From: Macrostomum lignano
Taxonomy: Eukaryota
Assembly: GCA_002269645.1 (NCBI GenBank)
Contig: NIVC01001720.1
Location: 1 to 48,497 of the forward strand
Length of the DNA: 48,497 nt
Direction of reading: 5' to 3'
In this document: one piece after another, positions 2,399-48,497 of the stretch
How the letters are laid out: every line of letters starts with the position of its first letter
How positions within the stretch are numbered: position 1 is the stretch's first letter
Translations under genes and position numbers: made by a program
Notes under the pieces: model-generated
What the model saw: only the letters and a program-made list of their open reading frames with translations
The model's database searches: none
Told to the model about the DNA's origin: nothing

Positions 2399-5300
2399 TC
2401 ACGTCCTCTCGTGCCCAGCCAAGTGCGCCTTCAAGTCGGGCATGTTTTTGGCCACACGGGCGCACTGGTTGCACTTGAGCTCGCCAGCCTTGCTCAGGCT
2501 GGAGAACCAGGCCCTGTCTATGGCCAAACTGGCCGAGTGACCGCTGCCGCGAATGCCGAGTCGACCGCTGCTGATCAAGTGCTGCTGACGATGCTGCCGC
2601 GGCTCCTCCACAGTTGAAGCCACCTGACTGCTGTCCGCGGATTCCAGCAGCTGTAGCAGCAGACTACAGTCTAAGAAAAATTCTGTAGTGAATGACAGCC
2701 AGTGCTTCTTGGTCTTCAGACAGGTTGACACAAAGTCCTGGCTGATGACGTGCATGTGAAGCTGGCTGCGGGTGTTAGAGCAAGATAAATTAGAAGATTC
2801 AGATATTCTACAGGTCGGTGAGAACTCACTTGGCCACCTACCGGACTTTTCTGCCCGTCCCTGACATGCACACTTCGAATGTACAGCCAATCCTTTGCTA
2901 ATTGAAAGTTATTTTTTTGTTTAAGCCTAATTAATTACATAAAACTTAAAGAAACTGTCAATCGCCCTGAAGATGACTAATGTAGTCGAAAACGGCTCGG
3001 AAATGTTGATAACACCATTCATCTTTCTACTGCTTTAAAAAGAGCTTCTCCTCTTCGATTGCAGAGACCATTTAAAGTTGCGAATTAATCACGCACCCTA
3101 GGCTTATTTTTGTGTTACAAATATGAATAAAGAAGATGGACAAGAACAATTCACGAATAAAACTATTAAAGAAAACAAATTTGTTTTGATTTTGTACTGT
3201 TTGAGTGAAGTTTAAATCCTAATTTGGACAGAGGAGATGCCAGCAGGTACTCTGATTCTGATGCTTAACCCCCCCCCCCAGCTCTCACCTCATACTTGGG
3301 ACCGCATGAAATCCGAAACGAAAGCCTTTTGGCAGCAGATTATTTTCTGAAATGGCCATGCAGCGGTGTGGAAAATACACAGAAAAGCATACCGTTGTTG
3401 TTAGAGCTGTAATTACAAACAAAAACAGAGAACAGCTAGCACTGCGAGTTCGGCTTACCGGCAATGAAACTCTCAGCCGCAGCGAGCATGCGCTTCAGCA
3501 TTGACGCATCCGAGCGTTGCAGCTGTGCCAGCGAATCAATTTGCCGCTTGGGCAGCACCAGGTAGTGATGACGAGCCTGAAAACACAAGTGAAGCGGAGA
3601 GAGTTGGATGTCGAAGCATCTTTTGGGTTCGTTTTCACGAGAAAATTAAATTTTCACTCGCGTCGCCATGGATTTTATGGTGAGAGGACAAAGCCAAGAA
3701 TTCAGCATATACACTTGCATGACTTATGCTTAGTTTGACGCCTTGTGCCCTAGGACAATGGAAAACCGGATTGATTCGATGCTTTCTTCACCGGGCTTTT
3801 TCCACTTGCAGCTCTTGGAGACTTTTCCACAACGAAGTTGAAATCCTCACCAATCTGCTCAGCTACAATGGCTATCCTAAGAACTTTGTGATGAAAATTG
3901 TCAACTCTTTTCTCAATGACAAACTGACTGAACCTACTCGGATGAAAGTTTGTGATTCCACCTCTGAATGTCCCTTGATCACTTTGCGCTTACTTTGGTG
4001 TTTGTTCTATAGAGTTTAAAAAGAAGTTAGAAAAGCTGCTCCGTAAAGACTTAAACACTCAAATCCGTGTTGTGTTTCGCACCGAAAAGATTGCTAAGTT
4101 CGTCTGCAAGTTGAAATCCAGTGTTCTACGTCCTCTCGCGGCTGGTGTCGTGTATAAATTTGTTTGCTCTGAGGACCAGAGCATCTCCTACATAGGAAAA
4201 ACTAAACGACACTTATACACGAGGGTCAGAGAGCACTAGCTAAAAAACTCTGCTATTAATGAACACCTGCTAACCTGCAGATCTTGTTGTGAGGCTGAAC
4301 CACACGAAATGATAAAGACTATTGATTTTTGTAATAGAGATTACATGCTCTGCCTATTAGAAGCCCTGTACATTAAGACCAAACAGCCCAATCAATACTG
4401 TATAAAAAATTGACTAAAATGTACAAGTTTTAAACCATCAATTAAAAACTCAATTAAATTACTCTTGTTACTCTCAACTATCTTCTTATATACTGAAAAT
4501 TCGTTCAAATTGTTTCTTAAATAAAAAGACCCTGACGATGTCCTCATGCAAATGAACGAAATGCATCGGCAATAAAACTAAATAAATACAATTTATGTTG
4601 ATTCTTACTTTTATTTATCTTGCATGACTAAATTTGTACATGTACATTATTTTGAGAATCGGTGTTGTCAGCGCTCATTTATACATACACCGCAGGCACT
4701 CAATTTAGCGCCGCAGGCTCTCATTTTGGCACCGCAGGCACTCATTTTAGCGCCGCAGGCACTCATTTTAGCGCCGCAGGAACTCATTTTAGCGCCACAG
4801 GCACTCATTTTAGCGCCACAGACACTCACTTTAGCGCCACAGGCACTCATTTTAGCGCCACAGACACTCACTTTAGCGCCACAGGCACTCATTTTAGCAC
4901 CACAGGAACTCATTTTAGCGCCGCAGGCACTCATTTTGTCGCCTTGAAGTAAAATTAGTAATTTCCACGACGGGTCACAAGGTGGTGTGGGGGGACAAAG
5001 CATCGGCATGTCCCTCCTATAGCTTTTACAGGAGGAAATGCCCCCCCCCCTGTCGGGTGGCGACGTCCTTGTTCACATCGACAAATCTAGCTAGAAATTG
5101 TCACTCCTGCTATCTAGAAATTGTCACTCCTGCTATCTAGAAATTGTCACTCCTGCTATCTAGAAATTGTCACTCCTGCTATCTAGAAATTGTCACTCCT
5201 GCTATCTAGAAATTGTCACTTTCGCTAGCTAGAAATTGTCACTCCTGCTATCTAGAAATTGTCACTCCTGCTATCTAGAAATTGTCACTCCTGCTATCTA

Positions 5301-9237: not shown

Positions 9238-10371
9238 CTAAAGCCTTCTTAAACACCGAAGACAGGCCTCCTTGTTGGGAATTTCTTCCGTCACAGCCAT
9301 ATCAAGCGGTGTCTTGTAGCCATCCAGACCCTCACATTCGCTGTCACGAAATTTAGGATTCGCGCCATGCTTCATCAGCAGAGAAATCAGCTCAGGGTTT
9401 CCCGCTCTCACCGCAAAGTGCAGAGCGGTCAGACAGGTCGAGTGCTGCTTGAAGTGAACATCAACTGACCCGTTCTCAAGCAGCCACTTGCACACCTCAA
9501 ACTGGCCCTTCTGCACGCCCAGCATCAACGGAGTCAATAAGTTGCTGCTTTTAAAACACGCATCAAAATTTAGCTGCAATTGTGGCTTGGCATTACGACA
9601 GAAATTATGCAGGCTAGCAAGCATTTCAACCTTTCCAGCAGATAAAATATAATGAAGCGGTGTGTACTTCTTTCTATCAGTCATTTCGAATGCTTCTTTA
9701 ATTTGAGACAAGTCTATTTGTTGGGAATTTCTTTGAATATGATTCTTCATCACGGAAAAAATTATTTCAAGGGACTCATCAAATCTGAGCTCCGTGCACC
9801 TGTGAAACACACTTTTGCCTTCATTGTCGAAGCAGCGATAAATTATAGTCCGATCGAAATTCAGGAGTCGCTCAAATATGTCAGCAAAGTCGCGACTGTT
9901 CAGATGCACAGCTAGCATCATCAACGTGTGCCCATACCGAGGATTTCTGTATCCAAGCAGTCTGTCCAGCGACCCAACTCGTTCAGCCTCATTCAGCATC
10001 ATTTTCGCTGCAGCTCCATTGCCTGATTCCAGTGCTGCTTCGATCGGAATGTATCCAGTTCGATCTGGCCTAAACAGCATTGACGGAATCTGGCTGACAA
10101 TCCACTCTACTGTGCTGCTAGCGTCACCTGACTCGGCATACTTTTCAAGGCCGAGCTTCACAATGCCAGGGTACTCCGCGAACTCTTTTTATATGTTAGG
10201 TGGCATCTTACAGAATGCCTGCAGCACTTGGCCAGCTGATTGATCAGACAGTTTATCCTGAGGTCCCGAGTCGCCTTGCTGAGAAGGCCACGAGTCGATG
10301 CTGCTGAAGACATCAAGAGCTTCTAGAGAGGAAAAGTCGAAAAAAGGTCGGTCTGACTTATCTGCCGACAT
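9238..10371 (-). pseudogene. Ankyrin-repeat gene copy 1, one in-frame premature stop
   Basis: ORFs 10371-10189 and 10161-9238 are in the same frame, separated by TAA at 10191-10189 where copies 3/4 have CAG (Gln). About 7 ANK repeats (TPLHY, TPLML, TALHFAV..GADP). Confidence 0.8.
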
Positions 10372-11267: not shown

Positions 11268-12402
11268 TTATATATCAGAAGTTCTTAAGCTCTTGACACA
11301 GGCCAGCTTATTTGGGACGTCCTCCGTCTCTGCCATAACAAGCGGTGTCTTGTAGCAACAGAGAAGATCGCACTCGCTGTCACAAAACCCAGGATCTGCG
11401 TTGTGTTCCATCAGCAGAGAAATCAGCTCAGGGTTTCCCGCTCTCACCGCAAAGTGCAGAGCTGTCAGACATGTCGAGTGCTGCTTGTAGTTAACATCGA
11501 CTGACCCGTTCTCAAGCAGCCACTTGCACACCCCAAACTGGCCCTTCTGCACAGCCAGCATTAGTGGAGTGAAAGCCGAGCTGCTTTGGTGGCAAGCATC
11601 AAAGTTCAGTACGATTTGCATGTGTCAGAAATATATCAAGATCTGTTAACATTGCTATATTTCCTGAGGAAGAAATATAGTGAATAGGTGTTTTCTCCCG
11701 ATTGTCCGCTACCTCCAGCGCTGCCTTTGCTTCAGTAGCGATTCGATCCTTGTGCACGCTAGGGAATCTCTTCAAAATGGTTAGAATCATCCGAAAGGAT
11801 TCACAGTAGTCGAACTCTGTGCACCTATGAAGCACATTTCTACCCTCATTGTCGCAGATTCTATGCAGCCCTGCTGGATCGAATTCAATCAATTTTAGAA
11901 GGATGTCCTCGCAATCTCGACTGTTCAGCTTCACTGCAAGCATAATCAAAGAGTGTCCATATAATTGATTTCTGTAAGCAAGCAGCCGTTGCAGTGTACC
12001 CGCATGCTTTGCAATGTCCAGCATCACTCTTGCAGCAGGTCCATTGCCCGACGCAAATGCCGCCTCAATGGGAATGTAACCGCTTTGATCCGTTCTAAAC
12101 AGCATTTCAGGAATCCAATAGATAAACCACTTCACTGTGCGTCTCGGATCGCCAGACTCTGCGTACTTTCTGAACGCCTGCTGCGCCATTCCCGGGTACT
12201 GGGCGAGCTCTTCTTGAACAGAAGTAAGCAATTTTCTAAAAGTATTCACTTCACTCCCAGGTGAAACAACCGATATTTCATTTTGTTTGTAAGAATGACC
12301 CCGAAGAGACGGCCAAGATTCGATACTGTTTAGAGCCTCCAAAGCTGCATCGTCAGCTGGAGCCTGAAGAAACGGTTCATTAGAATGATCTTCAGTTGAC
12401 AT
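11268..12402 (-). pseudogene. Ankyrin-repeat gene copy 2, one frameshift
   Basis: ORF 12402-11599 and ORF 11621-11268 overlap in different frames around cat-gca-aat-cgt (~11615). Joined, they align end to end with the other copies. An assembly indel cannot be excluded. Confidence 0.75.
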
Positions 12403-13730
12403 TTAACGGATTTATAAGGAGTTAGTTTAACGGCTGGCAGGTATTAGTGATACTTTTGTCATTTATCTCTTCCGTGGCCTCAGTCAATTTTGATTCATCA
12501 TTTCGCTGAAAACGAAGGGTTGAAAATTGCTAAGCTAGTTAAATTATTTATCGATAAAACAATAAAAATATTACATGTAACATTACACAGGACTGATCCT
12601 AATTGAACCACGTACCTGGCTAATACCCATTATTATCAATAATCTACCACTGCATTTTAAAGTCACACTTAGAAGACTTATATATGAGGCGTCACACTGG
12701 CGCGCTTGAATGGAAACTACGAAGCTCACATACTTTTTACGATTTTCAAAACTGCCGGTAACCGTCGCGATTTTGGTGAAGAATCAACTAATTTACATGT
12801 ACTTTAGAAGTTACGAACTACTCTTTTAAAAGTAAACAAGCACAAGTGGAAGTGAAGCAAAAGTGAATCCCAATATATAACAGAGGACCTGATATCCCAA
12901 ACAAGTTTGTAATTTAATTTGACGAAATAAATTAAGCGATACGATACCTTTTTGCAAGTAGTAGGATAAACATTTAGAGTAAGGTTTTACCACTCAGTGA
13001 CAGAAAACCGCTCTAGTAACAAACTGAAAGCAGAGTAATAGCAAAAACGAAGTAAATATCCATTAAATGGACACTCGCTACGATACAAGATATGGATTAT
13101 TTGTATGGAAATTCATAAAATAGCAGATAATATACTCATAAATAAAGACACTGTTCCAGAGAAATTACAAGGACCGCTAGAAGTTACCTTACCATTGTAC
13201 AACGGTAATTTCTAGTGGTACTTGTGTAATTAGTAAAAGGGAAAGGATCCTTAACAAAAGGCAGTGTACATATATGATTTAGGTGTACAGTGGCTCAATA
13301 GTAAAATCTCAAATTGAGTAACTATAGGCTTAAAATGAGAAGGCGAAATGAGTTTTTAAACAAAAATTTACCTGCAGTTATTAAGTCTTACTTACACTTT
13401 CAAAACGTTACAAAAATGAGCATTCACTTTGAGCATAATCAAAGTCTTATTCAAACCAATCTTCAAATCATGCTCAAACTCTTGAGCATGGACTCATGGA
13501 GCCCAGAAACTGCTCACTCAAGAGTCCGAGCTAAGACTCTTGGGTTGCATGCAGTGCAGTTGCTCTCTTGACTCAAATGTATATTGTCTAACAGACTTTC
13601 TTGCAGCGATTAGCTCGTAAAAAGCAAACAAAAATTACCAGATGTCATTAGCTTTGTGAAATACAGTACGAGTGTATTAAGTTCCTAGAACGAAGGCGTC
13701 TTGAACGAACGCAACCTTGAACAAAGGTTG

Positions 13731-14852
13731 TCATGAACGCGTCAATATTTTGATGCAAGCCTGCTTGTTTGGTATATCCTCCGTCTGTGCCATCCCCAGC
13801 GGTGTCTTGTAGTCAGCCACACCATCACACTCGCTGTCGATATACTCAGGATCAGCGCCATGCTTCATCAGCAGAGAAATCAGCTCAGGGTTTCCCGCTC
13901 TCACCGCAAAGTGCAGAGCTGTCAGACAGGTCGAGTGCTGCTTGAAGTGAACATCAACTGACCCGTTCTCAAGCAGCCACTTGCACACCTCAAACTGGCC
14001 ATTCTGCACGCCCAGCATCAACGGAGTCAACAATCTGCTGTCTTTAAAGCAGGCATCAAAGCTTATATTGATATTTTTATGACGCAGGAATCGCTGAAGA
14101 CTCTCGAGCATTTCAACATTCCCATCTAACGCGATGTAATGTAATGGAGTGTACTTCTTTGAGTCAGTCATTTCAAGTGCATCCTTTAAGTGGCGAATTT
14201 TATCTTTTAAAAACACACTAGAAAGATTTATTAAAAGACCAAAAATTATCTGCAATGAGGTACAAGACTTTGACTTTGTGCACCTGTGAAAAACATTACA
14301 TCCGTCCAAATCGTAGCAACGATGTACCGACGTGGGGTCGAAATTCAGGAGTCGCTCAAATATGTCAGCAAAGTCGCGACTGTTCAGATGCACTGCCAGC
14401 ATCATCAACGTGTGCCCATACCGAGCATTTCTGTATCCAAGCAGTCTGTCCAGCGACCCAACTCGTTCAGCCTCATTCAGCATCATTCTCGCTGCAGCTC
14501 CATTGCCTGATTCCAGTGCTGCTTCGATCGGAATGTACCCAGTTCGATCAGTCCTAAACAGCATTGACGGAATCTGGCTGACAATCCACTCTACTGTGCT
14601 GCTAGCGTCACCTGACTCGGCATACTTTTCAAGGCCGAGCTTCACAATGCCAGGGTACTCCGCGAACTCTTTCTGCACATTAGGTGGCATCTTACGGAAT
14701 GTCTGCAGCACTTGGCCAGCCGACTGAACAGCCAATTCGTCCTGCGGGTCCGAGCCATTTTGAAGAGACGGCCACGTGTCAATGCTGCTGAAGGCATTCA
14801 GGGCATCTCCCTTGTCAATTGGAGCCACTAAGAACACTGTTTCTGTTGCCAT
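13731..14852 (-). CDS. Ankyrin-repeat protein copy 3 (373 aa, coding region uninterrupted)
   Basis: True ATG at 14852. A ~100-aa non-repeat N-terminal region precedes ~7 ANK repeats (GYIPIEAA, GHTLMMLAV, GCNVFH, TPLHYIA, TPLMLGV, TALHFAV..HGADP, KTPLGMA). Confidence 0.9.
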   Translation of the reverse strand: MATETVFLVAPIDKGDALNAFSSIDTWPSLQNGSDPQDELAVQSAGQVLQTFRKMPPNVQKEFAEYPGIVKLGLEKYAESGDASSTVEWIVSQIPSMLFRTDRTGYIPIEAALESGNGAAARMMLNEAERVGSLDRLLGYRNARYGHTLMMLAVHLNSRDFADIFERLLNFDPTSVHRCYDLDGCNVFHRCTKSKSCTSLQIIFGLLINLSSVFLKDKIRHLKDALEMTDSKKYTPLHYIALDGNVEMLESLQRFLRHKNINISFDACFKDSRLLTPLMLGVQNGQFEVCKWLLENGSVDVHFKQHSTCLTALHFAVRAGNPELISLLMKHGADPEYIDSECDGVADYKTPLGMAQTEDIPNKQACIKILTRS

Positions 14853-16097
14853 TCACCGCAGTGCGAAACGGATTTAATCTGGAATTTTTTAGAGACCTCA
14901 ATTGGTGAACTTCGATGTGTATCCAACCGCTAAAAAACTTAATCGTCGGGATGCAAATGAAAAGCTACAGCTTAGAGTAGTCTTGTGACCTAGTTTGAAC
15001 GAATGAATGAACGGCGCAGTTTAATTTTAGTCGGAAAGCTACTGAAAACTTAAACTTGAAATGTACATTAAAATTATATATTTTACTAATGAAATTACAA
15101 GACGAAATTTTCCCTTCGGTAAGGTGAACCATTAAATAACACACTGTTTGTAAAATTCAATAAAGAACCCACTGAATCTATGACGTATCTGTAGTTGAAG
15201 ACAAAATATATGCTTTAATAAGTGGTACAGCAAAAGAAGAGAAGTAAATTTACCTTCTGCAGAACACATAGACACACTTAAAGTGAATTTACAAGTACCT
15301 GTTTCAATGATTTCGAGAACAATGCTATATAGACCATAAAACTAGTTTGGCAGAGTTAGTCTACTGATAAGTAGAAAGTGTGGAGTGTGTAGCGGAAAGC
15401 TTGCTAGGCGAGAGTGCAGAGTATAAAAAGAGGTTCTGCTCAGCCTAGCTATTGGGTGGAGTCTAGCCTTGGGCAGGCCGGCTGAGGGTCGAGGAACTCT
15501 CTAGGGACAGAAACCATTCCTGGCAGCATGACCCCGGTTCGATTCCAATTTTAGCTAGGTGGTGTACACGTATTTCACGCTAACAGCTTTCTAGAGTATT
15601 ATATACATCAGAACTCTTATAACTTCTTTGAGAAGGTATAATATAACGCAAGGTCAAATTTATATTGGCCTAAAACGTTTGATAGAAGCAAAGTGTCATT
15701 GTTCTGAGAGAAGAGTGCCAAAAAAAACAATCAGGAGACTTTGGCAGTGTTGGCGCTTTAACAAAACATTACTGTCAGGAAATTTTGAGCACAAACTCGC
15801 TTTACTTGAGGCTTACGCATTTTCAAATGAAACAAAAACAACAGGAAAAATTAAAAGTTCTATTGTCAAACAGGCATAGCAAAAATCAAGAGGCATTTTA
15901 AGACCAGCCTGAAATACACCAATAATTTCATCTCTGACCATGACAGACGTTTCTTGCCAAACTCGAGTCTAAATAGACGCCGATCGTACATAATTAGCTT
16001 AATACAGCAGGCTGCAGGACTGGACAATTGGCTGGTCATCCAAATGTCTTGATGGTCTGATTCTGTTCGTTTCAAGGATCGCAGAGAATGGCTAGAC

Positions 16098-17234
16098 TTA
16101 AAAAAATTCTTCAGCTCTGCGGAGACATCGAATACAAGCCTGCTTGTTCGGAATGTGTTCAGTTTCTGCTACAGCCAACGGTGTCCTGTAGCCCTCAACA
16201 CCATCACACTCGCTGTCGATATACTCAGGATCAGCGCCATGCTCCATTAACAGAGAAATCAGCTCGGGGTTTCCCGCTCTCACCGCAAAGTGCAGAGCTG
16301 TCAGACAGGTCGATTGCTGCTTGAAGTGAACATCAACTGACCCGTTCTCAAGCAGCCACTTGCACACCTCAAACTGGCCATTCTGCACGCCCAGCATCAA
16401 CGGAGTCAACAATCTGCTGTCTTTAAAGCAGGCATCAAAGTTTATATTGATATTTTTATGACGCAGGAATCGCTGAAGACTCTCGAGCATTTCAACATTC
16501 CCATCTAACGCGATGTAATGTAATGGAGTGTACTTCTTTGAGTCAGTCATTTCAAGTGCATCCTTTAAGTGGCGAATTTTATCTTTTAAAAACACACTAG
16601 AAAGATTTATTAAAAGACCAAAAATTATCTGCAATGAGGTACAAGACTTTGACTTTGTGCACCTGTGAAAAACATTACATCCGTCCAAATCGTAGCAACG
16701 ATGTACCGACGTGGGGTCGAAATTCAGGAGTCGCTCAAATATGTCAGCAAAGTCGCGGCTGTTCAGATGCACTGCAAGCATCATCAATGTGTGCCCATAC
16801 CGAGCATTTCTGTATCCAAGCAGTCTGTCCAGCGACCCAACTCGTTCAGCCTCATTCAGCATCATTCTCGCTGCAGCTCCATTGCCTGATTCCAGTGCTG
16901 CTTCGATCGGAATGTATCCAGTTCGATCTGGCCTAAACAGCATTGACGGAATCTGGCTGACAATCCACTCTACTGTGCTGCTAGCGTCACCTGACTCGGC
17001 ATACTTTTCAAGGCCGAGCTTCACAATGCCAGGGTACTCCGCGAACTCTTTCTGTACATTAGGTGGCATCTTACGGAATGTCTGCAGCACTTGGCCAGCC
17101 GACTGAACAGCCAATTCGTCCTGCGGGTCCGAGCCATTTTGAAGAGACGGCCACGTGTCAATGCTGTTGAAGGTATCCAGGGCGTCATCAGTTGGAGCCC
17201 TAAAAAATGACTGCTCGCTGGGCTCCGAGGCCAT
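16098..17234 (-). CDS. Ankyrin-repeat protein copy 4 (~378 aa, coding region uninterrupted)
   Basis: First true ATG at 17234 (MASEP); the ORF track starts 33 nt earlier at a non-ATG codon. Nearly identical to copy 3 over the core. Confidence 0.9.
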   Translation of the reverse strand: MASEPSEQSFFRAPTDDALDTFNSIDTWPSLQNGSDPQDELAVQSAGQVLQTFRKMPPNVQKEFAEYPGIVKLGLEKYAESGDASSTVEWIVSQIPSMLFRPDRTGYIPIEAALESGNGAAARMMLNEAERVGSLDRLLGYRNARYGHTLMMLAVHLNSRDFADIFERLLNFDPTSVHRCYDLDGCNVFHRCTKSKSCTSLQIIFGLLINLSSVFLKDKIRHLKDALEMTDSKKYTPLHYIALDGNVEMLESLQRFLRHKNININFDACFKDSRLLTPLMLGVQNGQFEVCKWLLENGSVDVHFKQQSTCLTALHFAVRAGNPELISLLMEHGADPEYIDSECDGVEGYRTPLAVAETEHIPNKQACIRCLRRAEEFF

Positions 17235-18677
17235 CACGACTTTCTGAAGCAGATTGTCAATCAGCAAATAAATTTGCGGCCTGTCTGCAGCATAAACAGT
17301 TTTGCCGTAATGTCAACAATGAGCAGTCTTTGAGTACATTATTAGGTAAGAAGCTTAACCTAGGTATCTAGACTACTCTTTTTGGAATATATACAACACG
17401 AAGATTTATTGATCTGCTGAAGAACTTTGAAAACGCTAAAAGTACAACAGTAATTTGTCCGGTTAAATATTCGGTTTATGATTATACGCCTAGGAAGGCA
17501 GTCAAATCTGGATCGGCTGTTGATAAGTTGTGAAATGCAGTCTGTTTTTAAGTCGAGCAGTTATTTGTTAGGTATATAGGTTTAAATGAGTTGTTAGTAC
17601 TTACTACACGGCAAGAGGCCCAGAGCTTACAGGAGGGACAGAAAGGCACAGGTAGATTGATGGGGTATTTTTGGGTTAAGTATCTGTTGTGTTTTACTTT
17701 GAAATAACAAAGTTTAATCTGGAGCTGGATCTAGTTCTGTAGACGGAGCTAGTTTCGGTTTTAGAACTATTTCTGGCCTAAAGAGCAGCAATGAATCTTC
17801 AATCATGAAGATTGCAATAACAAGCAAACTGATTTACAAGCCAGCTCTCTAACACACTGGCACCTCGGGAGGAAACTTGAAAAATGCAATGCGCGTGTAT
17901 TTTATTTCAAGCAGTCTTCGCCATCCAACCCGAATCAGAGGATTGAGTGGATGAGCAAATTCAGCAGAGGATACGCAATTACTATTGACGTACGTACGGG
18001 TCCGCCAGTGCAGGACAAAACAGGTCGTGTAATCAGCTACTGAAGCAACAATGAATATTGCTATTGAATGATATATGCTTTTAATGTTTATACAAGCCAA
18101 AGTTAAACAAAGGTACTCTTACAATAGCTTCAATCAATAAATCAAGTATACTGTGATAAGGAAAAATTAAATTCAGCATCTCAGCATCCTATCAACAGGC
18201 CTTGTGTCATAAGGACCCCCTTCGAGTCTCCTTCTTTACTACGATAAAATCGACCCAGCGACGACCGAAGTTTTAAGGTGCACTTGGTGATGATAAGTAA
18301 TAACATTAAATATTGTAGCAGAATACATCAACGTGACTACACATAAATAGAGTGCCGTGTGACTGTGTGAACAGGTGGAACTCTTTTGAGGTCCTGTTAC
18401 CACAGAATTAAAACTATTTAATCTTCATAAGAATCAACACGTATAGATCAGAAAGTCTAAACAAATAGAGCTAGGTACATGCAATGTACATGATTTACAT
18501 TCAAAGCGCGTTTACATACAATACAACAGTTCAAGCTGCCTGATAATCACAAGACACAAACGCACAAGCGTTGGGCAATTATAAACAAAACAGCTTGTTC
18601 TAACTTGTACTTTAGAACCTTTCGCATTCACTACTTGTAAGTAGTCTAGAATAGCAATTCAACAACTTCGCTACTCA

Positions 18678-20372
18678 TCAGGAGGTAGTGGCGGGAATAA
18701 CAAGCTCCACGAGCTCGCCAGCTTTGATATCCAGTAGCACCTGTTTGATGACGCACATGGAAGCATGGTCAGAGTCTGACAGAAGAGATATGGCCAGGAA
18801 TACAGGGTCAGCTTCAGAATGAATGTAGTCTTTATCGGCCTTCAGATCTGGCGCGTACTGGATCAGCCGGCTGATGAACTGCTCAGACTTGGCCAGTCTG
18901 GATAGCTGTTTGGAGAGCTCTTCGCGCCTTTCGGTGCCAAACAGTTGGAGGTCTCTGACAATCTTTTTATCTCTGAAGAATTCTGCGGGATCGCATTGCA
19001 GTTGTTGTTGTTGCGGGATTGCTGGGTGTGTTAGTGACGAGGAAGAGGAGGCTGAGGCTGCATTGCCAGATGCAGACGCAGCGGAAGCAGACAATGCAGG
19101 AGTTTCCGTTAGCACAGCTCTCGGCATTGAGTCCACTGTATAGTTGTAGCTGCAGGCCAATGCACTGGGGTCAAGCGGGAGGTACTCAAAACATTTCTTT
19201 TTGTTTGGGATCGCTTCCGTTGTGGCAATCTGCAGCGGAGTCTTGTAGCCATCAAGCCTCTCGCAGTCCTCATCAAAAAACTTTGCATCGGCTCCATGAG
19301 AGCTGAGCAGGCCGATGAGGTCGTAATAGCCCAGTTTGACTGCGAAATGCAGCGCAGTGAAGCAGGACACGGGCTGCTTCGCCGACACGTCTGCGCTGCC
19401 CTTCTCAAGCAGCCACTTGCAGGCGTCGTAGCGACATGATTCAACCGCAATCATCAGCGGCGTCTTGCTGTCGCTGGTCAGGAAGCGAGCATCGTAGTCA
19501 ACTTGGAGAGCCTTACTTCGTGCGAACGAATCTAAAACGTTGAACATCTCGATGTCGCCAGCCTCGGCCATGTAGTGAATTGGAGTCTTATAGAACCGAT
19601 CGGTCATGTCTAGCGCCTCTTTGATACTATGCTTACTGATCTCCATGGAGTCCATCTCCAGAACAGCGTCTAGAATGATGCGGAAGGAGGTGGCATATTT
19701 GTCAACAGCGCAGCAGTGGAAGACATTCCGACCGTGCGTGTCGTAGAACTGATAGATCTGAGTTGGGAAACTCTGCAGCAGATTAATGAGGATGTCCCTG
19801 CAGTTGGCGCTGTCAAAGTCAATTGCCAGCATTAGGAGAGTGTGCGCAGCCGAATTCCGGTGAGACAGGACAAATTTCTTCTGCGGTCCACTGCTGGCCA
19901 GCTCGATAAAGAATCTGCTGGCGTGTTGGTTCTTTTTGAGCAAGGCCCTGCCAAGCGGACTGTCCGCAGTTTGATTATAAGTTTGATTATCAACAGTTAA
20001 CAGGTACTCTGGCGCCTCCCGCATCAGCGACTCTATGGAACGAGTTGCACTGCTGCTGGACGCGTAGTTCAACAACAGAGCCCTGATCTTATCTTCGTAG
20101 TTAAACAGAGACTTCTGAATATTCGGTGGAAGAGCGCGGAACTTCCTAAGCTCGTCGGCGTGCTCCATAGTTGCGGGGGCATTGCTGGGAGCGGCTCTGG
20201 ATGCCGGCGCTGCCCGACCATTGGCGGTGGTTGCACTTGGACGGGTCGACATGATGACACGAAAAGGTTCCGCCCGGTGTGTATCAGTACTGCCGCTTAT
20301 CTTCCAGGACTGGGAAAGATTGCTGCTGCTGCCTGGACTGGGGGATACTGCTGCTGCTGCTTGGGCCTGCAT
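18678..20372 (-). CDS. Ankyrin-repeat protein copy 5 (564 aa) with low-complexity linker and C-terminal death-domain-like region
   Basis: Divergent but colinear ANK core (TPIHYMA, TPLMIAV, TALHFAV..HGADA, KTPLQIA), an Ala/Ser/Gln linker, then ~95 aa (~18690-18960) with death-fold-like spacing. Confidence 0.88.
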   Translation of the reverse strand: MQAQAAAAVSPSPGSSSNLSQSWKISGSTDTHRAEPFRVIMSTRPSATTANGRAAPASRAAPSNAPATMEHADELRKFRALPPNIQKSLFNYEDKIRALLLNYASSSSATRSIESLMREAPEYLLTVDNQTYNQTADSPLGRALLKKNQHASRFFIELASSGPQKKFVLSHRNSAAHTLLMLAIDFDSANCRDILINLLQSFPTQIYQFYDTHGRNVFHCCAVDKYATSFRIILDAVLEMDSMEISKHSIKEALDMTDRFYKTPIHYMAEAGDIEMFNVLDSFARSKALQVDYDARFLTSDSKTPLMIAVESCRYDACKWLLEKGSADVSAKQPVSCFTALHFAVKLGYYDLIGLLSSHGADAKFFDEDCERLDGYKTPLQIATTEAIPNKKKCFEYLPLDPSALACSYNYTVDSMPRAVLTETPALSASAASASGNAASASSSSSLTHPAIPQQQQLQCDPAEFFRDKKIVRDLQLFGTERREELSKQLSRLAKSEQFISRLIQYAPDLKADKDYIHSEADPVFLAISLLSDSDHASMCVIKQVLLDIKAGELVELVIPATTS

Positions 20373-23186: not shown

Positions 23187-25116
23187 AACAACAACACAAC
23201 AACAGAGTACGCTGCCAGTTCACAAAAGCAGCGTCAGATGGCGCGCTTCAAAGCTTGGGCGCGAACAAAAGCCGCACCGCCGGCAGAGTCCGGGGCGCCG
23301 GCGTCAGCCAGCAGACAGTCGACGTAGCGCCGAGTCTTCGCCTGTCCCCGCCGGTAGGGTGCCTGCAACGTAAGTAGCAGCACCTCCTGCACCGGCTCCG
23401 GACAGTAGGCCTCGGCGCGGATGACGTGGCCTGCCAGCTGGAGTCGCCGACGGCGCAGCAGATCGCTAGGACGGGCCAGGCCGGCGCGATGATAGAGCGC
23501 CGTGTTGGTGACTCGCTCGTTGCCGATCTTGAAGGCGGCGCGCAGCAGGCCAGCGTGCGCCGCGTCGACTTGAGCCTCGAGCGAGTCTGTCAGCGTCCAG
23601 GTCTCGGCGTTGTATAACAGGACGGTCTCGATCACCGCCTGGAACAGCGCCGCCCTCTGGCGGTCCGGTAGGGCCTCGGACTGCAGGACTGACCTTATAG
23701 AACGAAAGGCAGCCCAAGCAAGTCCTCGGCGACGCCGCAGATCCTCGCGGACGTCGGGAACCAGACCGCCGAGGTAGACGAACTGCTGACATCTTGGAAG
23801 CTCACTCGCCTGTCCGTCAGCGCCTCGGCAGAAGATTGCAGCCTCGGTGTCGTCCGGCACGCATAGCACGACGGTCTTCTGCGTGTTGACCACCAGGCCG
23901 ACGCTCGCCGCAACGGCAACCAGCCTATCCAGCTGTCGTTGCGCGCCCTCGACGGTCGAGGACAGCAGGGCGAGGTCATCGGCGTAGCCAAGCACGCTGA
24001 GCCGTCTCTCCGGTTGGCGTCGACCCACGCGTCGCCGCAGCAGGAAGCCGTCGTCGTTGGAAGGCAGAGCAGTCCGTAGCACCCAGTCAAGCACCAGAAT
24101 AAATAGGAACGGCGCTAGCGTATCTCCCTGGAGCACCCCGGAGGATGTCTCGAAGAAATCCGATAGGCCGTCCTATCGGAGACGACCCCGCGATCGACGA
24201 AGCGAGGGAAGATCTGGAGAGGCTCCGACTGAGTGGGCGGCCAACTCGCGAGGCGGAGGAGGCTCTGGCGGCTGTCTACCTGCAGCGGCAGCAGTCCGCT
24301 GTCGATGACGCCATCCAAGCCGTCTCTGCCGCAGGGCCCGATGCCAGAGGGCGCGTGGCCTGGTCCGCCATCAACACTCTGACGGGGCGAAAGCGGCGCA
24401 TCGCGCTCAACCTGGCAGGCGACACTCCGGATGACCGCAGGAACGAGCTGCGCGAGTTCTTCGCCGCCATTGTCAACGCGCCGCCCCCTCCGCTTCCAGA
24501 AAATCTGAGGCTGCCGCCGGAGACGCCGTTGCCGGCGGAGGAGAGCTTCAATGTTGCCCCAGTCAGCACAGCCGACGTTGTGAAGTTCGCTCGGCAGTCG
24601 CCGGGCGGCAAAGCGCTTGGTCCGGACGAGGTGCCCACCGAGGCGCTGCGGATCCACTGCGTGGCCACTGAGGTCGCCAGAGTGATGAACCGCGTGCTTT
24701 TCGGTGAGGTGGCGCCAAACGAATGGACCACGGCGCACATCGTCGCCATTCCAAAGAAGCCGGGCACCACCAAGCTCGAGGAGCATCGAGGCATCTGCCT
24801 ACAGTCCTGCGCCGCGAAGCTGTTCAACCGCATGCTGCTATCGCGGTTACAGCCTGTGCTGGACCCGTACCTGCGACCTGAGCAGAACGGATTCCGGCCC
24901 CATCGCGGCACAGTGACGCAGATCCTGGCTCTTCGACGAGTCATCGAGGAGGCGCGCATCCGCCAGTTGACCCTGATCCTGATCTTCGTCGATTTCAGGA
25001 AGGCTTTCGACTCGGTCGTGAGGGACGCGCTCCCAGAGGTGCTCCGTGCGTACAACGTGCCAGAGCTGCTGATTTCTGCTGTCATGGCGCTGTACCACGG
25101 CACGACGGCTGCTGTC
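23187..25116 (-). mobile_element. RTE-like non-LTR retrotransposon, 5'-truncated with inverted 5' segment
   Basis: The minus part (24171-23234) encodes the RT C-half (QGDTLAPFLF, YADD, YLG) and ends in a hairpin plus a (GTT)n tail. The plus part (24172-25116) encodes the preceding RT N-half (GPD, RGICL, EQNGFR, FVDFRKAFDSV). TSD TTCATTCTAAT at 23176-23186 and 25117-25127. Confidence 0.95.
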
Positions 25117-25871
25117 TTCATTCTAATGCAAAGATTTCATTTTTTAGCTTGTAAAAGTAAAAAACTTTTGCTAAAAATGAGTGTTTTTATAAAAAATTGT
25201 ATTTTTTTAATGCCATAATGCACTTAATTATTATAAAAATACTCCTAATTATAAATGAGCCTAATTAGCATACTTTAGTATCTTAAAAAACTAAAATTTT
25301 ATACTATAAATTTACAATGCTAAATATTTCATTCATATTTTAAAATCCAAAAAGCTGTTCTAAAACTAAAGTAAACTATTGCTCTGAGTTTTAATACCAA
25401 AATAGCAGAGTTAATAGGTTTACTTCCACTAGAAGTACATTGCTATCGCCTATCATGCTTGTGTAGTAGGCCTAATACCTCTATCTCTCAAAAATCCCAC
25501 TAGATGCCACAAAGTTGTAGCAGGCCCCTTAATTCTACCTTTCCTAACTCTACTAGATATTACCAAGTTGCTATAGGCCTTATTAATTTCTTACCTAGTT
25601 GTACTAAACTATACTGGATTTTTACTGTTTTCCTAGAATTTAATTCCTACACTTACATGTACTTTTATACTTTATGGGCTATCGTCGCTACGAATTACCC
25701 CTGGTAGCCTCAGTGCCCGAGCGGCAAGACACTGCTAACTACTGCTAAATTTGTATCCTACAGTCCAAACACGACGTTTACCACAGATCGAGGGGTTTTC
25801 GGCTTCCTTTATTACTGTCTCTCACGACTTAGAACTGTATCACGCTTGGCTGCAACAGCTTGGACAGTTTA

Positions 25872-40494: not shown

Positions 40495-43356
40495 ATGGTT
40501 AATTCAAAAACAAAAGCCGAAGCAAAGGCAAAGCGGCAGCGGCAGCAGCAGAAGCAGCACGATCAGCAACGCAGGCGGCATCGAAGCCGCACCTCGTCGG
40601 AGAACTCATCTGACACCACCGACACCGCCAACAATGACACTGACAGCGGAGTCGAAGCGCCCCCGAGGCTCATAGAGCGGCACTCATCAACAACGTCGCT
40701 GAAACGAGATCTGCAGGACTTGAAACGCTCATCTGACGCGCATGACGTCTATGACAGCGTGCAAGCGGGCGCGTCTGGCTCTGATGATCCCATTGACTAC
40801 GGCGTACCGGCGCTCTTTAACGACAACGACCGTAAGGCCAACTGGGAGTCGGGTGGTAGCCCTCCAGAGGAGCGTCTGGTCATGGAGAAGTACTTAATGC
40901 TACGGGAGCTTGAGTTCCCGGACGAAAAAAAGCTAGACAATGACTCACTACAAGAGCGCTGGAACGCGGTGCTTCAGGTGAAACGGGAGCGGTGCAAGCG
41001 GACTCCGGAGCATCACTTAAAAGCGCTGACTTCGCTGAACCAAAGTTTTCCAAAGAAGCCCCAGAAGAAGCAGCACGAAGCGCAGCGAAAGTTGGAATCA
41101 AGGTGTACCAATGTATGCAGCGATCTTAAGTCTGATATGATCAAGGGCCATATATCCTATGTTAATGAGCTGCAGAAAGCTGGGGTCTTCGTCCAGTTGA
41201 AGACATTGTTGCAGAATCTCGCAGCGCTGGCAAAGTGCAGTACAACGCCAGTTATCTGCGCTCTGATTTGTTTGAAGAATGCCCTGTGCAGGTCTGAGAA
41301 GACCAGGAACAAAGCAATCACACTGGAAGTTTCAGCCGAGCTGGTTAAGCTTTTTAACTCTCGAACGGATATAGAAGTTCAGCCGTGCATGTTTGACTGC
41401 TTCTCTCTCATTGCTTCATGCAGCATTGGGACCAACCAGCTGGTGAACTACCTTTTCACGGCTAACAAAGAGAAAATTAACCAGGTGTCTACAGCAGCAA
41501 AGGTGCGCTCTGACGACGGTTTCGTACCCTTTATTGTCTGGTACCTGCTGTTCAGTCCAATAGATCCTCAGCTGCAGGAGCTTCGCGTGAAGCTTGCCAT
41601 GGTTTCAACTTTCTACAACTTGCTGACCAACTGTGTCACCCTGGACCAGCGCGTGTTTATCATCGAGCATCTGCGGGTTCATGGCTACAACTTTGATGCT
41701 TTCGAAAGGTGCCTTGAGAGTGTGCAGGATACCACCGACCTCGAGGAGAAATACACCTTAAACAGTCTGGACGAACTCATTGGAAAGATCAAGGTGTTGC
41801 ACATTGATGTTCAACTGATTGCTGATCGAGCCTCCATAGCGGAGGCTCGCAACGAAGTTCTACGAGATGAGATTAATCACCTGGAGAAGCAACTATCGCA
41901 AAGTGGTCAGAAGCTAAGTGACGCTATGGAAGAAATCGAAGACTTAAAAACCAAGAAGTCGGCGCAGCCTCCGGTGGCTTCTGCATCCAGGCTGGTCACC
42001 ACCACTAGCTCGCAGAATCAGAAAGTGCCAGCACCTTTACCGACACCTCCGCCGCCGCCACCGCCAGCACCTCCTCCGCCACCACCACCGTCAACTGTAG
42101 ACGGAGGTGGGCGACCCGCACCCGAGAATCCGGAAATTGACTACTACGAATCAGTCTACGACAGACTCAAAGAGGACTACTCAGGGCTGATCAATAGCCG
42201 GACTCATCTGCCTGCCTGTCACTGGGATCCGTTGTACACTGTCAAAGGAACTGTCTTCGAGGCTGCTCAACAAGAACAGGAAAACTTACTGAAAGACCTC
42301 GATTTAGGCGACTTCCAACGCAAGTTCAGCCACATGACACCGGAAACTCCTGGGCGTTTGTACAGGCCTGGACCTGCGTCAAAAGAAACGGCGTCAGGTC
42401 CTAAGGGACTCGCGGGTGGCCGTCAGCTGCACCAACCGCATCTTCCGCAGCAAAAGCAAGACCAGGACCAGAAGACCGTACTTCTAGATGAACGCACGGC
42501 ACAGAATCTGGTGATCACGAAGCGTCGTTTCCGCGTGGAGGATGCGGAGATTTGTCGCGCAATCGAAGCAATCGACACCAATGTGATCAGCGGCGAAATG
42601 GCTGAGATTCTCCACAAGTTCCTACCTGCATCTCGCTCCGACATCAAACTAGTGGCCAAAAATTATAATCGGTTGCATCAGCTTGGCGAGGCCGACCAAT
42701 TTTATGTTCGTCTTGCCTGCATCGAGCGTGTGCCTACCAAGCTGCAGGTCATAGCGTTCTTGGACTCGTATCGCGACCGCTGCAGCGATTGTAACCAGAA
42801 GATTGAGTGCCTCAGTCGCGCCTGCAGCCGCAGCCTGACGTGCCGGCCTATCCTGCAGAAGCTGCTCACCTACTTTCTGGTGCTGGGCAACTTTATGAAT
42901 TCCGGAAGGAAGCGCTATGCGCCGGGCTTCCGACTGACCTCTATCGAGACCATCGCTCGCATTCCGGACAGTTCCGGCCGCGAGACCGTGCTGGACTACG
43001 TTCGCAGAACTGCACGCAGCAAACTGACGCCTGAGGAACTGGCGCGTCTTCGACAACAGTTTGACTATGAAGTGCCGAAGGTCTCGCTGCCGTCAGTTAG
43101 CCTGGAGCTTGAGCAGCTGCAGAAGGGCCTGATTCAGCTGAAAGAGGAGTGCGCGCACACCGAAGAACCGTCAGCGCGTCTGTCCTCCAGTCTCGAGCAG
43201 GCCTCCAAGGAAATCCCTGCTCTGGTGTCTCGACAGCAGCTGTCCTACAGCCTGTACCATCAGCTGTGCTCACTAATGGGAGAGAATCTTACCGACACAG
43301 AGCCCGACAAACTGTTCACCACACTTTGCTTCCTGGTCAAGCAGCTAACCACATGA
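40495..43356 (+). CDS. Formin (GBD/FH3-like region, coiled coil, FH1, FH2), single-exon ORF of 953 aa
   Basis: Poly-Pro FH1 (PTPPPPPPPAPPPPPPP) followed by FH2 motifs: HWDPL..GTVF, LLDERTAQNLVI, EADQF, LVLGNFMNSG..APGFRLTSI..D..VLDYV. The ORF stops at the end of FH2. Confidence 0.93.
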   Translation: MVNSKTKAEAKAKRQRQQQKQHDQQRRRHRSRTSSENSSDTTDTANNDTDSGVEAPPRLIERHSSTTSLKRDLQDLKRSSDAHDVYDSVQAGASGSDDPIDYGVPALFNDNDRKANWESGGSPPEERLVMEKYLMLRELEFPDEKKLDNDSLQERWNAVLQVKRERCKRTPEHHLKALTSLNQSFPKKPQKKQHEAQRKLESRCTNVCSDLKSDMIKGHISYVNELQKAGVFVQLKTLLQNLAALAKCSTTPVICALICLKNALCRSEKTRNKAITLEVSAELVKLFNSRTDIEVQPCMFDCFSLIASCSIGTNQLVNYLFTANKEKINQVSTAAKVRSDDGFVPFIVWYLLFSPIDPQLQELRVKLAMVSTFYNLLTNCVTLDQRVFIIEHLRVHGYNFDAFERCLESVQDTTDLEEKYTLNSLDELIGKIKVLHIDVQLIADRASIAEARNEVLRDEINHLEKQLSQSGQKLSDAMEEIEDLKTKKSAQPPVASASRLVTTTSSQNQKVPAPLPTPPPPPPPAPPPPPPPSTVDGGGRPAPENPEIDYYESVYDRLKEDYSGLINSRTHLPACHWDPLYTVKGTVFEAAQQEQENLLKDLDLGDFQRKFSHMTPETPGRLYRPGPASKETASGPKGLAGGRQLHQPHLPQQKQDQDQKTVLLDERTAQNLVITKRRFRVEDAEICRAIEAIDTNVISGEMAEILHKFLPASRSDIKLVAKNYNRLHQLGEADQFYVRLACIERVPTKLQVIAFLDSYRDRCSDCNQKIECLSRACSRSLTCRPILQKLLTYFLVLGNFMNSGRKRYAPGFRLTSIETIARIPDSSGRETVLDYVRRTARSKLTPEELARLRQQFDYEVPKVSLPSVSLELEQLQKGLIQLKEECAHTEEPSARLSSSLEQASKEIPALVSRQQLSYSLYHQLCSLMGENLTDTEPDKLFTTLCFLVKQLTT

Positions 43357-48422: not shown

Positions 48423-48497
48423 GTGCGCGCTTTGCTGAATAATGATTCATTAATGGCCTGTTTATTATAATCGAGGATCTGACAGTCCTGACAGAAG

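What the first reader, a model, noticed from the sequence alone, without database searches (positions are those of the whole stretch)
18678..18995. Death-domain-like C-terminus on only one member of the ankyrin array
Seen: after an Ala/Ser/Gln linker, copy 5 ends in LFGTERREELSKQL..FISRLIQY..IHSEADPVFLAISLL..HASMCVIKQVLLDIKAGELVELV. By eye this follows the MyD88/IRAK-type death-domain pattern (L....R..LS..L, DP...L, AS...L...L..I....V). Established: ANK + death domain is the layout of the NF-kB p105/p100 C-terminal half and of ankyrins/DAPK, and death domains nucleate signalling complexes. Inference: copy 5 is the signalling member, and the shorter copies are sensors or decoys that lost the domain.
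Basis: partly seen in the sequence, partly recalled or inferred. Interest (0 to 1): 0.72.

Follow-up and report, generated by a model that had tools for sequence, protein, structure and literature searches.

The report
Possible death-like tail on flatworm ankyrin
One gene in a flatworm-specific cluster of ankyrin-repeat genes carries an extra helical tail that structure prediction places nearest to death domains, but no sequence-profile test confirms this, so it is a plausible, unproven and fairly ordinary domain combination.

Summary
The window is nuclear DNA of the free-living flatworm Macrostomum lignano, so there is no "host". The quoted sequence is real. It is the last 105-108 residues of a 564-aa ORF (18678-20372, minus strand), after a Pro/Ala/Ser/Gln linker. 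It occurs once in the window, and the other four ankyrin copies stop just after the repeats.

- **Against a death domain:** Pfam gives no hit, even at E<=10. PDB sequence searches, an exhaustive phmmer search of 1.84 billion proteins, and HMM and hhalign comparisons with flatworm TNFR, p75NTR and RIPK1 death domains find nothing beyond its own cluster. The tail has no tryptophan, a hallmark residue in those comparators.
- **For a death domain:** Two low-confidence AlphaFold models (pLDDT 56 and 65) give a helical bundle. Its nearest PDB neighbours are mostly death-fold domains (26 of 31 Foldseek hits; best is p75NTR DD, E 0.32). One Smith-Waterman alignment to a p75NTR death domain runs colinearly across six helices (empirical P about 1e-3, one of 11 comparators).
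- **Selection:** There is no sign of selective constraint on the tail.

The death-fold reading is plausible (about 0.45) but unproven. "Signalling member versus decoys that lost the domain" is unsupported, and the direction of gain or loss cannot be determined.

The parts
18678..20372 (-). Copy 5 of the ankyrin array: complete 564-aa ORF including the stop codon (18678-18680)
   Evidence: ORF list. It is 93-99% identical to M. lignano proteins BOX15_Mlig001172g14 and BOX15_Mlig013882g3. Pfam Ank families match aa 245-353.
19179..20189 (-). Family-homologous region (aa 62-398): the ankyrin-repeat solenoid shared with copies 1-4
   Evidence: tblastn aligns aa 62-398 to copies 4, 3 and 1 at 38% identity, E 1e-68 to 1e-72. 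Alignment A1. PDB hits are generic ankyrin and DARPin repeats over aa 230-387 only.
19005..19178 (-). Linker (aa 399-456), rich in Pro, Ala, Ser and Gln, and low in complexity. That it is flexible or disordered is inferred from composition.
   Evidence: Sequence. No counterpart in the paralogues. Highest dN/dS of the gene, though on only 7 differences.
18681..19004 (-). C-terminal tail (aa 457-564, 108 residues): an orphan, all-helical module.
   Evidence: Unique in the window. Only its own cluster is found among 1.84 billion representative proteins. No Pfam or PDB sequence match. AlphaFold2 models are helical.
18699..18935 (-). Predicted six-helix core of the tail (tail residues 24-102 = aa 480-558): the candidate death-fold
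   Evidence: AF2 helices at 24-38, 41-50, 52-63, 67-77, 83-92 and 96-102. 26 of 31 Foldseek PDB hits are death-fold domains, led by p75NTR DD. The Smith-Waterman alignment to p75NTR DD chain 2n80_A covers tail residues 26-100 with 20 of 72 identities.
16098..17267 (-). Copy 4: intact short paralogue (389-aa ORF) that ends just after the ANK region, with no tail
13731..14852 (-). Copy 3: intact short paralogue (373 aa), no tail
11268..12402 (-). Copy 2: divergent paralogue read as two ORFs in different frames (one frame break or a short intron), no tail
9238..10311 (-). Copy 1: short paralogue with one in-frame stop in its N-terminal part, no tail

Best explanation
Copy 5 is the transcribed, 5'-most gene of a Macrostomum-specific tandem family of cytoplasmic ankyrin-repeat proteins. 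Beyond the repeats it carries a roughly 58-residue flexible linker and a compact helical module of about 80-90 residues.

The most likely reading is that this module is a very divergent, tryptophan-less member of the death-fold superfamily, closest to death domains proper. On that reading it would serve as a protein-protein interaction or oligomerisation handle tethered to a target-binding ankyrin solenoid, as in other animal proteins with ankyrin repeats plus a C-terminal death domain.

- **Shown:** the ORF, its uniqueness within the array, its presence in the duplicated locus and in transcript-based gene models, and its predicted helical nature.
- **Inferred:** the death fold (low-confidence model plus one marginal alignment) and any interaction function.
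For: **Organism and gene.**. The GenBank gene models are built from transcripts (PMC5730564).

**Structure prediction.**
- AF2 with the three available sequences gives pLDDT 64.7 and pTM 0.56, with residues 31-70 at 73-81. It predicts six helices between residues 24 and 102, plus one extra N-terminal helix.
- In Foldseek against PDB, 26 of 31 hits with E<=10 are death-fold domains (18 DD, 5 CARD, 3 PYD). The top seven are all death domains: p75NTR three times, NF-kB p100, UNC5H2, FADD and ankyrin-1. The best has E 0.32, probability 0.75 and 23% identity.
- The independent single-sequence model also has CARD and DD structures as its best TM matches, at 0.42-0.56.
- In the viral library, which holds few death folds, hits are noise at TM about 0.2. 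One of the few exceptions is a Marseillevirus protein named "Death domain-containing protein" (TM 0.36).

**Pairwise alignment to p75NTR DD chain 2n80_A.**
- Smith-Waterman raw score 47 (BLOSUM62, 11/1), against 24 +/- 4 for shuffles. 1 of 3000 shuffles and 1 of 1801 natural 108-aa windows reach it.
- The alignment is colinear with the predicted helices. It has 20 of 72 identities, and 15 of 20 large hydrophobic positions are matched.

**Why a Pfam miss is weak evidence here.** Pfam's Death model also misses genuine flatworm TNFR death domains; T. solium and F. hepatica give no hit.
Against: **Sequence searches are negative.**
- There is no Pfam match of any kind at E<=10. This holds for the tail, for sub-windows of it, for the homeologous variant, and for linker plus tail together.
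- PDB phmmer and hmmsearch find no death-fold chain.
- Exhaustive phmmer finds no relative outside its own cluster.
- hhalign against a working death-domain profile gives probability 0.17%. That profile is built from flatworm TNFRs and itself finds RIPK1, p75NTR, PIDD and TNFR1 in PDB.
- HMM scores with the filters off equal those of shuffled sequence.
- BLASTP against the M. lignano TNFR death domain and against p75NTR finds nothing.
- Ten of the 11 death-domain comparators give no Smith-Waterman signal.

**Hallmark residues.** The residues invariant in the comparator alignment (two Trp) are absent. The tail contains no Trp at all.

**Structure evidence is weak.** All Foldseek E-values are >=0.32 and most TM-scores are below 0.5. 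The models are low-confidence, and they were built from three near-identical sequences.

**No constraint.**
- dN/dS for the tail is about 0.7, on 17 differences.
- Nucleotide identity to the homeolog is 95.0% in the tail. It is 95.8% in the next 500 nt of 3' flank and 97.4% in the ANK region.
Confidence: 0.45

Rival explanations
1. The tail is a real, folded, lineage-specific helical module that is not a death fold. It could be, for example, a private helical bundle that dimerises the protein or folds back on its own ankyrin groove. On this reading the death-domain neighbours in Foldseek only reflect how common 90-residue six-helix domains are in the PDB and in AlphaFold's training.
For: - All profile and HMM tests are negative.
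- The hallmark Trp residues are missing.
- TM-scores are mostly below 0.5, and no Foldseek hit has E below 0.3.
- The two AF2 models disagree on the closest subfamily, CARD in one and DD in the other.
- No homologue exists anywhere else.
Against: - The Foldseek lists are far more enriched in death folds than chance topology matching would suggest (26 of 31).
- The alignment to p75NTR DD is colinear over all six helices, with empirical P about 1e-3.
- Ankyrin repeats followed by a C-terminal death domain is a frequent animal architecture (established knowledge).
Confidence: 0.3
2. The linker and tail are an evolutionarily young extension with little or no constraint. They could have arisen through loss of the ancestral stop codon or capture of adjacent sequence. 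On this reading they have no specific function, and the predicted helices are incidental.
For: - The tail has no homologue anywhere.
- It is the least conserved part of the CDS, and no better conserved than the adjacent 3' flank.
- dN/dS is about 0.7 for the tail and above 1 for the linker.
- The paralogues end cleanly just after the repeats, and similarity stops there.
- The family is in flux, with two of the five copies broken.
Against: - An ORF of 166 codons stays open in three sequence versions.
- The amino-acid differences between versions avoid almost all large hydrophobic positions, with conservative I/V and R/K changes among them.
- AF2 gives pLDDT 73-81 over the centre of the tail, which is not typical of random sequence.
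- The homeologs diverged too recently (dS about 0.04) for the lack of measurable constraint to mean much.
Confidence: 0.2
3. Copy 5 is an NF-kB p105/p100- or IkB-like signalling protein whose death domain nucleates a complex, and the short copies are sensors or decoys that secondarily lost the domain.
For: The NF-kB p100 death domain is Foldseek hit 4, at E 1.4. The overall ANK-then-tail order matches the C-terminal half of p100/p105.
Against: - No Rel-homology domain is present.
- The ANK similarity is generic, to ankyrin, DARPins and TRPA1, not IkB-specific.
- The polarity of gain versus loss cannot be determined, and there is no remnant of the tail behind the other copies.
- Platyhelminths lack FADD, CRADD, PIDD and TRADD (PMC11463336).
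- There is no "host", because this is a free-living animal.
Confidence: 0.05

Closest known systems
p75NTR (TNFRSF16) death domain, PDB 2n80, 1ngr, 7csq
   Same: It is the best Foldseek neighbour of the model (E 0.32, probability 0.75, 21-23% identity over 85-91 columns). It is also the only comparator with a pairwise sequence signal: Smith-Waterman score 47, 20 of 72 identities, colinear over six helices.
   Different: - The similarity is below every database-level significance threshold.
- The two conserved Trp residues are not matched.
- p75NTR is a transmembrane receptor, not an ankyrin protein.
- M. lignano's own p75-like TNFR death domain shows no similarity to the tail.
Animal proteins made of ankyrin repeats followed by a C-terminal death domain (ANKDD1-type; also the C-terminal halves of NF-kB p100/p105, ankyrins and DAPK)
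   Same: The order of parts matches: an ankyrin solenoid, then a linker, then a helical module of about 90 residues at the extreme C-terminus. Ankyrin-1 and p100 death domains are among the top seven structural neighbours.
   Different: The Rel-homology, ZU5/UPA and kinase domains that define those specific families are absent. The tail fails the Pfam Death profile. The ANK region is a lineage-specific family with only generic repeat similarity. The family names are from established knowledge and were not retrieved here.
Macrostomum lignano TNFR (BOX15_Mlig018038g1) death domain and other flatworm TNFR death domains (PMC7519573)
   Same: It comes from the same organism and shows that genuine death domains exist there (Pfam Death E 1.7e-13). 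Flatworm death domains are divergent enough that several escape Pfam.
   Different: There is no detectable similarity to the tail: hhalign probability 0.17%, HMM score equal to shuffles, and no BLASTP alignment.
The short paralogues in the same array (copies 1-4, and the 373-398-aa genes in L001)
   Same: They share 39-42% identity over about 330 residues, including the last repeat and the IPNK..C motif, with the same orientation and tandem layout.
   Different: They stop 3-9 residues after that motif. They have neither linker nor tail, and nothing resembling them lies downstream.

Membership tests
Death domain (Pfam PF00531; clan CL0041 death-fold superfamily) | Significant match to a family profile (Death, CARD, DED or PYRIN) | tested here: not met
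   hmmscan against Pfam-A gives 0 families at E<=10. This holds for the tail, four sub-windows, the homeologous variant, and linker plus tail. hhalign against a flatworm TNFR death-domain profile gives probability 0.17%. The HMM score equals that of shuffles.
Death domain (Pfam PF00531; clan CL0041 death-fold superfamily) | Compact bundle of six antiparallel helices, about 80-90 residues, with death-fold topology | tested here: inconclusive
   AF2 predicts six helices in residues 24-102, but at pLDDT 64.7 and pTM 0.56. 26 of 31 Foldseek neighbours are death-fold domains, but the best has E 0.32 and TM is 0.38-0.49. The single-sequence model resembles CARD more.
Death domain (Pfam PF00531; clan CL0041 death-fold superfamily) | Hallmark conserved residues, judged by the comparators obtained here: Trp before the L..LG motif and Trp in the ML..W motif, both invariant in alignment A4 and present in the PDB p75NTR and RIPK1 death domains | tested here: not met
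   The tail contains no Trp. Only an L-S pair (L-G in the homeolog) could correspond to the LG motif.
Death domain (Pfam PF00531; clan CL0041 death-fold superfamily) | Pairwise similarity to at least one established death domain, above chance | tested here: inconclusive
   The Smith-Waterman score against p75NTR DD (2n80_A) is 47. 1 of 3000 shuffles and 1 of 1801 natural windows reach it. This is one of 11 comparators, and the other ten show nothing. BLASTP reports no alignment.
Death domain (Pfam PF00531; clan CL0041 death-fold superfamily) | Homotypic assembly with other death-fold domains | not testable with these tools
   This needs biophysical or structural data on the protein.
NF-kB p100/p105 (Rel-homology domain, ANK repeats, death domain) | N-terminal Rel-homology domain and IkB-type ankyrin repeats | tested here: not met
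   Pfam finds only generic Ank families. The N-terminus is low-complexity. The best PDB ANK matches are ankyrin-1/2, DARPins and TRPA1, not IkB or p100.
Canonical ankyrins (ANK repeats, ZU5-UPA, death domain) and DAPK (kinase, ANK, death domain) | ZU5/UPA supramodule, or a protein kinase domain | tested here: not met
   No such Pfam families are found in the 564-aa protein. The full-length ankyrin-1 chain 7tw3_G aligns only to the repeats.
Macrostomum-specific tandem ankyrin family (copies 1-5 here; BOX15_Mlig001172g14 and its neighbours) | Homology over the whole N-terminal-plus-ANK region (aa 62-398), in a tandem, same-strand arrangement | tested here: met
   tblastn gives E 1e-68 to 1e-72 and 38% identity to copies 1, 3 and 4. 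The same layout is found in the duplicated locus L001. There are no relatives outside M. lignano beyond generic ANK hits.

The most novel reading that the evidence does not exclude
The tail is a genuine but extremely divergent, tryptophan-less death domain private to Macrostomum. Flatworms have lost the classical death-domain adaptors (FADD, CRADD, PIDD, TRADD), and on this reading the tail couples a rapidly duplicating ankyrin family to the remaining death-domain receptor, the p75-like TNFR. That would make it a lineage-specific adaptor replacing the lost ones.
Probability: 0.1. Interest if true: 0.55.

Novelty: new member of a known kind. Interest (0 to 1): 0.3.

Why it matters
If the tail is a death fold, it adds a flatworm-specific protein with ankyrin repeats plus a death domain to a phylum where the usual death-domain adaptors are reported missing (PMC11463336) but a TNFR with a death domain persists (PMC7519573). 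That would give a candidate partner for that receptor.

It would also be an example of a death domain too divergent for current profiles, in line with the poor Pfam coverage of flatworm TNFR death domains seen here. If the tail is not a death fold, it is simply an orphan C-terminal extension on one paralogue of a fast-evolving gene cluster, which is ordinary.

Either way, ankyrin repeats followed by a death domain is a well-known architecture. The finding is of modest interest.

Tried and rejected
- **Homologues of the tail.** The exhaustive phmmer search returned only its own cluster. Two word-indexed searches returned only P0001 and P0002 plus generic ANK proteins, and did not even list the paralogues.
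- **ANK bait for comparators.** I used the third protein search with a generic ANK protein (P0007), hoping to fetch proteins with ANK repeats plus a death domain. None of the 120 listed hits carried PF00531.
- **PDB chains as ids.** get_proteins does not accept them.
- **Comparators finally obtained.** Death-domain comparators came from the FASTA supplement of PMC7519573 and from alignments printed by the PDB search.
- **Profile tests.** hhalign in profile-profile and -glob modes gave nothing. A larger hhalign permutation test timed out. HMMER with the filters off gave shuffle-level scores.
- **Selection tests.** dN/dS between homeologs and region-by-region nucleotide identity were both uninformative, because the duplicates are only about 4% diverged.
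- **Remnant of the tail behind copies 1-4.** I searched at the protein and DNA level and found none.
- **More comparators from papers.** The search was unproductive. PMC11463336 has no supplement held as text.
- **Rejected readings.** A viral or pathogen origin is rejected, because the neighbours are formin, cadherin and zinc-finger genes and the proteins are M. lignano's. An NF-kB, IkB, ankyrin or DAPK identity is rejected.
Full report
**What the window is.** The 564-aa ORF at 18678-20372 (minus strand) is 93% and 99% identical to two Macrostomum lignano proteins, BOX15_Mlig001172g14 (P0001) and BOX15_Mlig013882g3 (P0002). Its neighbours are ordinary animal genes: a C2HE zinc finger, a formin FH2 protein and cadherin exons. 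There is also a broken reverse-transcriptase sequence. The window is therefore chromosomal DNA of a free-living flatworm.

**The array.** Five same-strand ankyrin genes lie between 9238 and 20372.
- Copies 3 (13731-14852) and 4 (16098-17267) are intact and 93% identical to each other.
- Copy 1 (9238-10311) carries one in-frame stop.
- Copy 2 (11268-12402) is split into two frames.
- Copy 5 is the most divergent, at 39-42% identity to the others.

All copies share the region equivalent to aa 62-398 of copy 5. Pfam recognises ankyrin repeats in it, and PDB searches match only generic repeat proteins. A duplicated locus on Mlig_3_7 contig NIVC01000237.1 (L001) has the same layout, with a tail-bearing gene first and short copies after it. 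This fits the known large-scale duplication in the sequenced DV1 line (PMC5730564).

**Checking the observation.** The quoted residues are exactly the C-terminus of copy 5.
- After the last repeat comes a 58-residue linker rich in Pro, Ala, Ser and Gln (19005-19178). The 108-residue tail follows (18681-19004).
- The paralogues stop 3-9 residues after the conserved IPNK..C motif.
- tblastn with the tail finds only itself in the window and only the homeologous copy in L001.
- DNA similarity between copy 5 and the other copies ends near 19201.
- The extension stays open for 166 codons in three versions. It is included in GenBank gene models that were built from RNA-seq transcript assemblies.

**Is it a death domain by sequence? 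No test says so.**
- Pfam gives no family at E<=10. This holds for the tail, four sub-windows, the homeologous variant, and linker plus tail.
- phmmer and a three-sequence profile against all PDB chains find no death-fold protein.
- An exhaustive phmmer search of 1.84 billion representative proteins finds only the tail's own cluster. The tail is an orphan.

For a profile-profile test I needed comparators taken from the tools.
- I took flatworm TNFR sequences from the supplement of PMC7519573. The M. lignano TNFR has a clear Pfam death domain (E 1.7e-13).
- An alignment of seven of these domains (A4) works as a death-domain profile. It retrieves RIPK1, p75NTR, PIDD, TNFR1 and NRADD death domains from PDB.
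- Against this profile the tail scores hhalign probability 0.17%. With HMMER's filters off, its score is no better than that of shuffled sequences; 666 and 889 of 2000 shuffles do as well.
- The residues invariant in A4 include two tryptophans, and the tail has none.

One caveat limits the weight of the Pfam result. Pfam's Death model also gives no hit at all on the T. solium and F. hepatica TNFR death domains. A miss is therefore weak evidence in this phylum.

**The one sequence signal.** In pairwise Smith-Waterman comparisons with 11 death domains, ten give nothing. The exception is the p75NTR death domain, chain 2n80_A, with its sequence taken.
- It scores 47 (BLOSUM62, 11/1), against 24 +/- 4 for shuffles. 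1 of 3000 shuffles reach it.
- 1 of 1801 natural 108-residue windows from 130 other proteins reach it.
- The alignment spans tail residues 26-100 and is colinear with the predicted helices. It has 20 of 72 identities, and 15 of 20 large hydrophobic positions are matched.
- After allowing for 11 comparators, this is P of roughly 0.01-0.03. That is suggestive only, and BLASTP does not report the alignment.

**Structure prediction.**
- Folded alone, the tail gives pLDDT 56 and seven helices. Its best TM matches in PDB are CARDs and the UNC5H2 death domain (TM 0.42-0.56), but no hit has E<1.
- With the three available sequences, pLDDT rises to 64.7 and pTM to 0.56, with 73-81 over residues 31-70. 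There is one N-terminal helix, and six helices lie between residues 24 and 102.
- Foldseek then returns 31 hits with E<=10, of which 26 are death-fold domains (18 DD, 5 CARD, 3 PYD). The top seven are p75NTR three times, NF-kB p100, UNC5H2, FADD and ankyrin-1 death domains. The best has E 0.32, probability 0.75 and 23% identity, and TM-scores are 0.38-0.49.
- In the viral library the hits are noise at TM about 0.2. One exception is a protein named "Death domain-containing protein", at TM 0.36.

The model is thus specifically death-fold-like. It is also low-confidence, built from three near-identical sequences, and no single match is significant. Foldseek uses amino-acid similarity as well, so its p75NTR top hit and the Smith-Waterman result are not independent.

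**Constraint.**
- Between the window and the homeolog, the tail has 12 non-synonymous and 5 synonymous differences (dN/dS about 0.7). The ANK region gives 0.49.
- Nucleotide identity is 95.0% in the tail, 95.8% in the next 500 nt of 3' flank, 97.4% in the ANK region and 90.7% upstream.
- With dS near 0.04 these numbers cannot show selection for or against. They give no positive evidence that the tail is maintained.

**What it most likely is.** I put about 0.45 on a very divergent death-fold (death-domain-like) interaction module tethered by a flexible linker to an ankyrin solenoid. The remaining estimates are:
- about 0.3 on a folded helical module of another kind
- about 0.2 on a young, essentially unconstrained extension

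The last of these fails on three points. There is no Rel-homology, ZU5/UPA or kinase domain. The ankyrin similarity is only generic. And the polarity of gain versus loss cannot be determined, because copy 5 is the outgroup of the array and no remnant exists behind the others.

**Context.** Platyhelminths are reported to lack FADD, CRADD, PIDD and TRADD (PMC11463336). They keep a TNFR whose cytoplasmic part is a death domain (PMC7519573).

**Novelty and interest.** Ankyrin repeats followed by a C-terminal death domain is a familiar animal architecture. If the call is right, this is a new and very divergent member of a known kind, in a lineage-specific family. The evidence is not strong enough to claim that. 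Interest is modest.

Noticed in passing
window 23234-25218: Broken retroelement. The reverse-transcriptase coding sequence is present as two pieces on opposite strands (one rearrangement). Each piece covers only part of the Pfam RVT_1 profile (1-105 and 120-202), and there is no complete RT ORF. ORFs also lie at the corresponding side of the homeologous locus (L001 392-3378), but I did not examine them.
   Followed up: partly
window 9238-10311 and 11268-12402 (minus strand): Two of the five ankyrin copies look non-intact. Copy 1 has one in-frame stop in its N-terminal part. Copy 2 is read as two ORFs in different frames, through one frame break or a short intron. The family appears to be in birth-and-death turnover.
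   Followed up: partly
window 13499-17267 versus L001 13069-21687: The short copies do not correspond one-to-one between the window and the duplicated locus. For example, window 17206-16132 matches L001 20349-21430 best, at 91.9%. This suggests unequal crossing-over or gene conversion within the array.
   Followed up: no
window 14332-14727, 16711-17106 and 9878-10243 (plus strand): Long ORFs of 121-131 aa lie antisense to ankyrin copies 3, 4 and 1 and are nearly identical to each other. They are most simply a by-product of the conserved sense-strand coding sequence.
   Followed up: no
window 2399-2890 (-), 40495-43356 (+), 44132-48470 (+): The neighbouring genes are a C2HE zinc-finger ORF, a 953-aa formin (FH2, E 2.7e-49) and several cadherin-domain exons. 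These are ordinary animal chromosomal context.
   Followed up: no
not in the window: flatworm TNFR sequences from PMC7519573, supplement 3: Pfam's Death model passes its cut-off only for the M. lignano (50.9 bits) and H. diminuta (25.4 bits) TNFR death domains. It gives no hit at all for T. solium and F. hepatica. Flatworm death domains are poorly covered by the profile.
   Followed up: partly
protein searches: The word-indexed protein search never returned the 38%-identical paralogues, although they are called genes in L001. The absence of hits from that tool is therefore weak evidence for divergent families.
   Followed up: no
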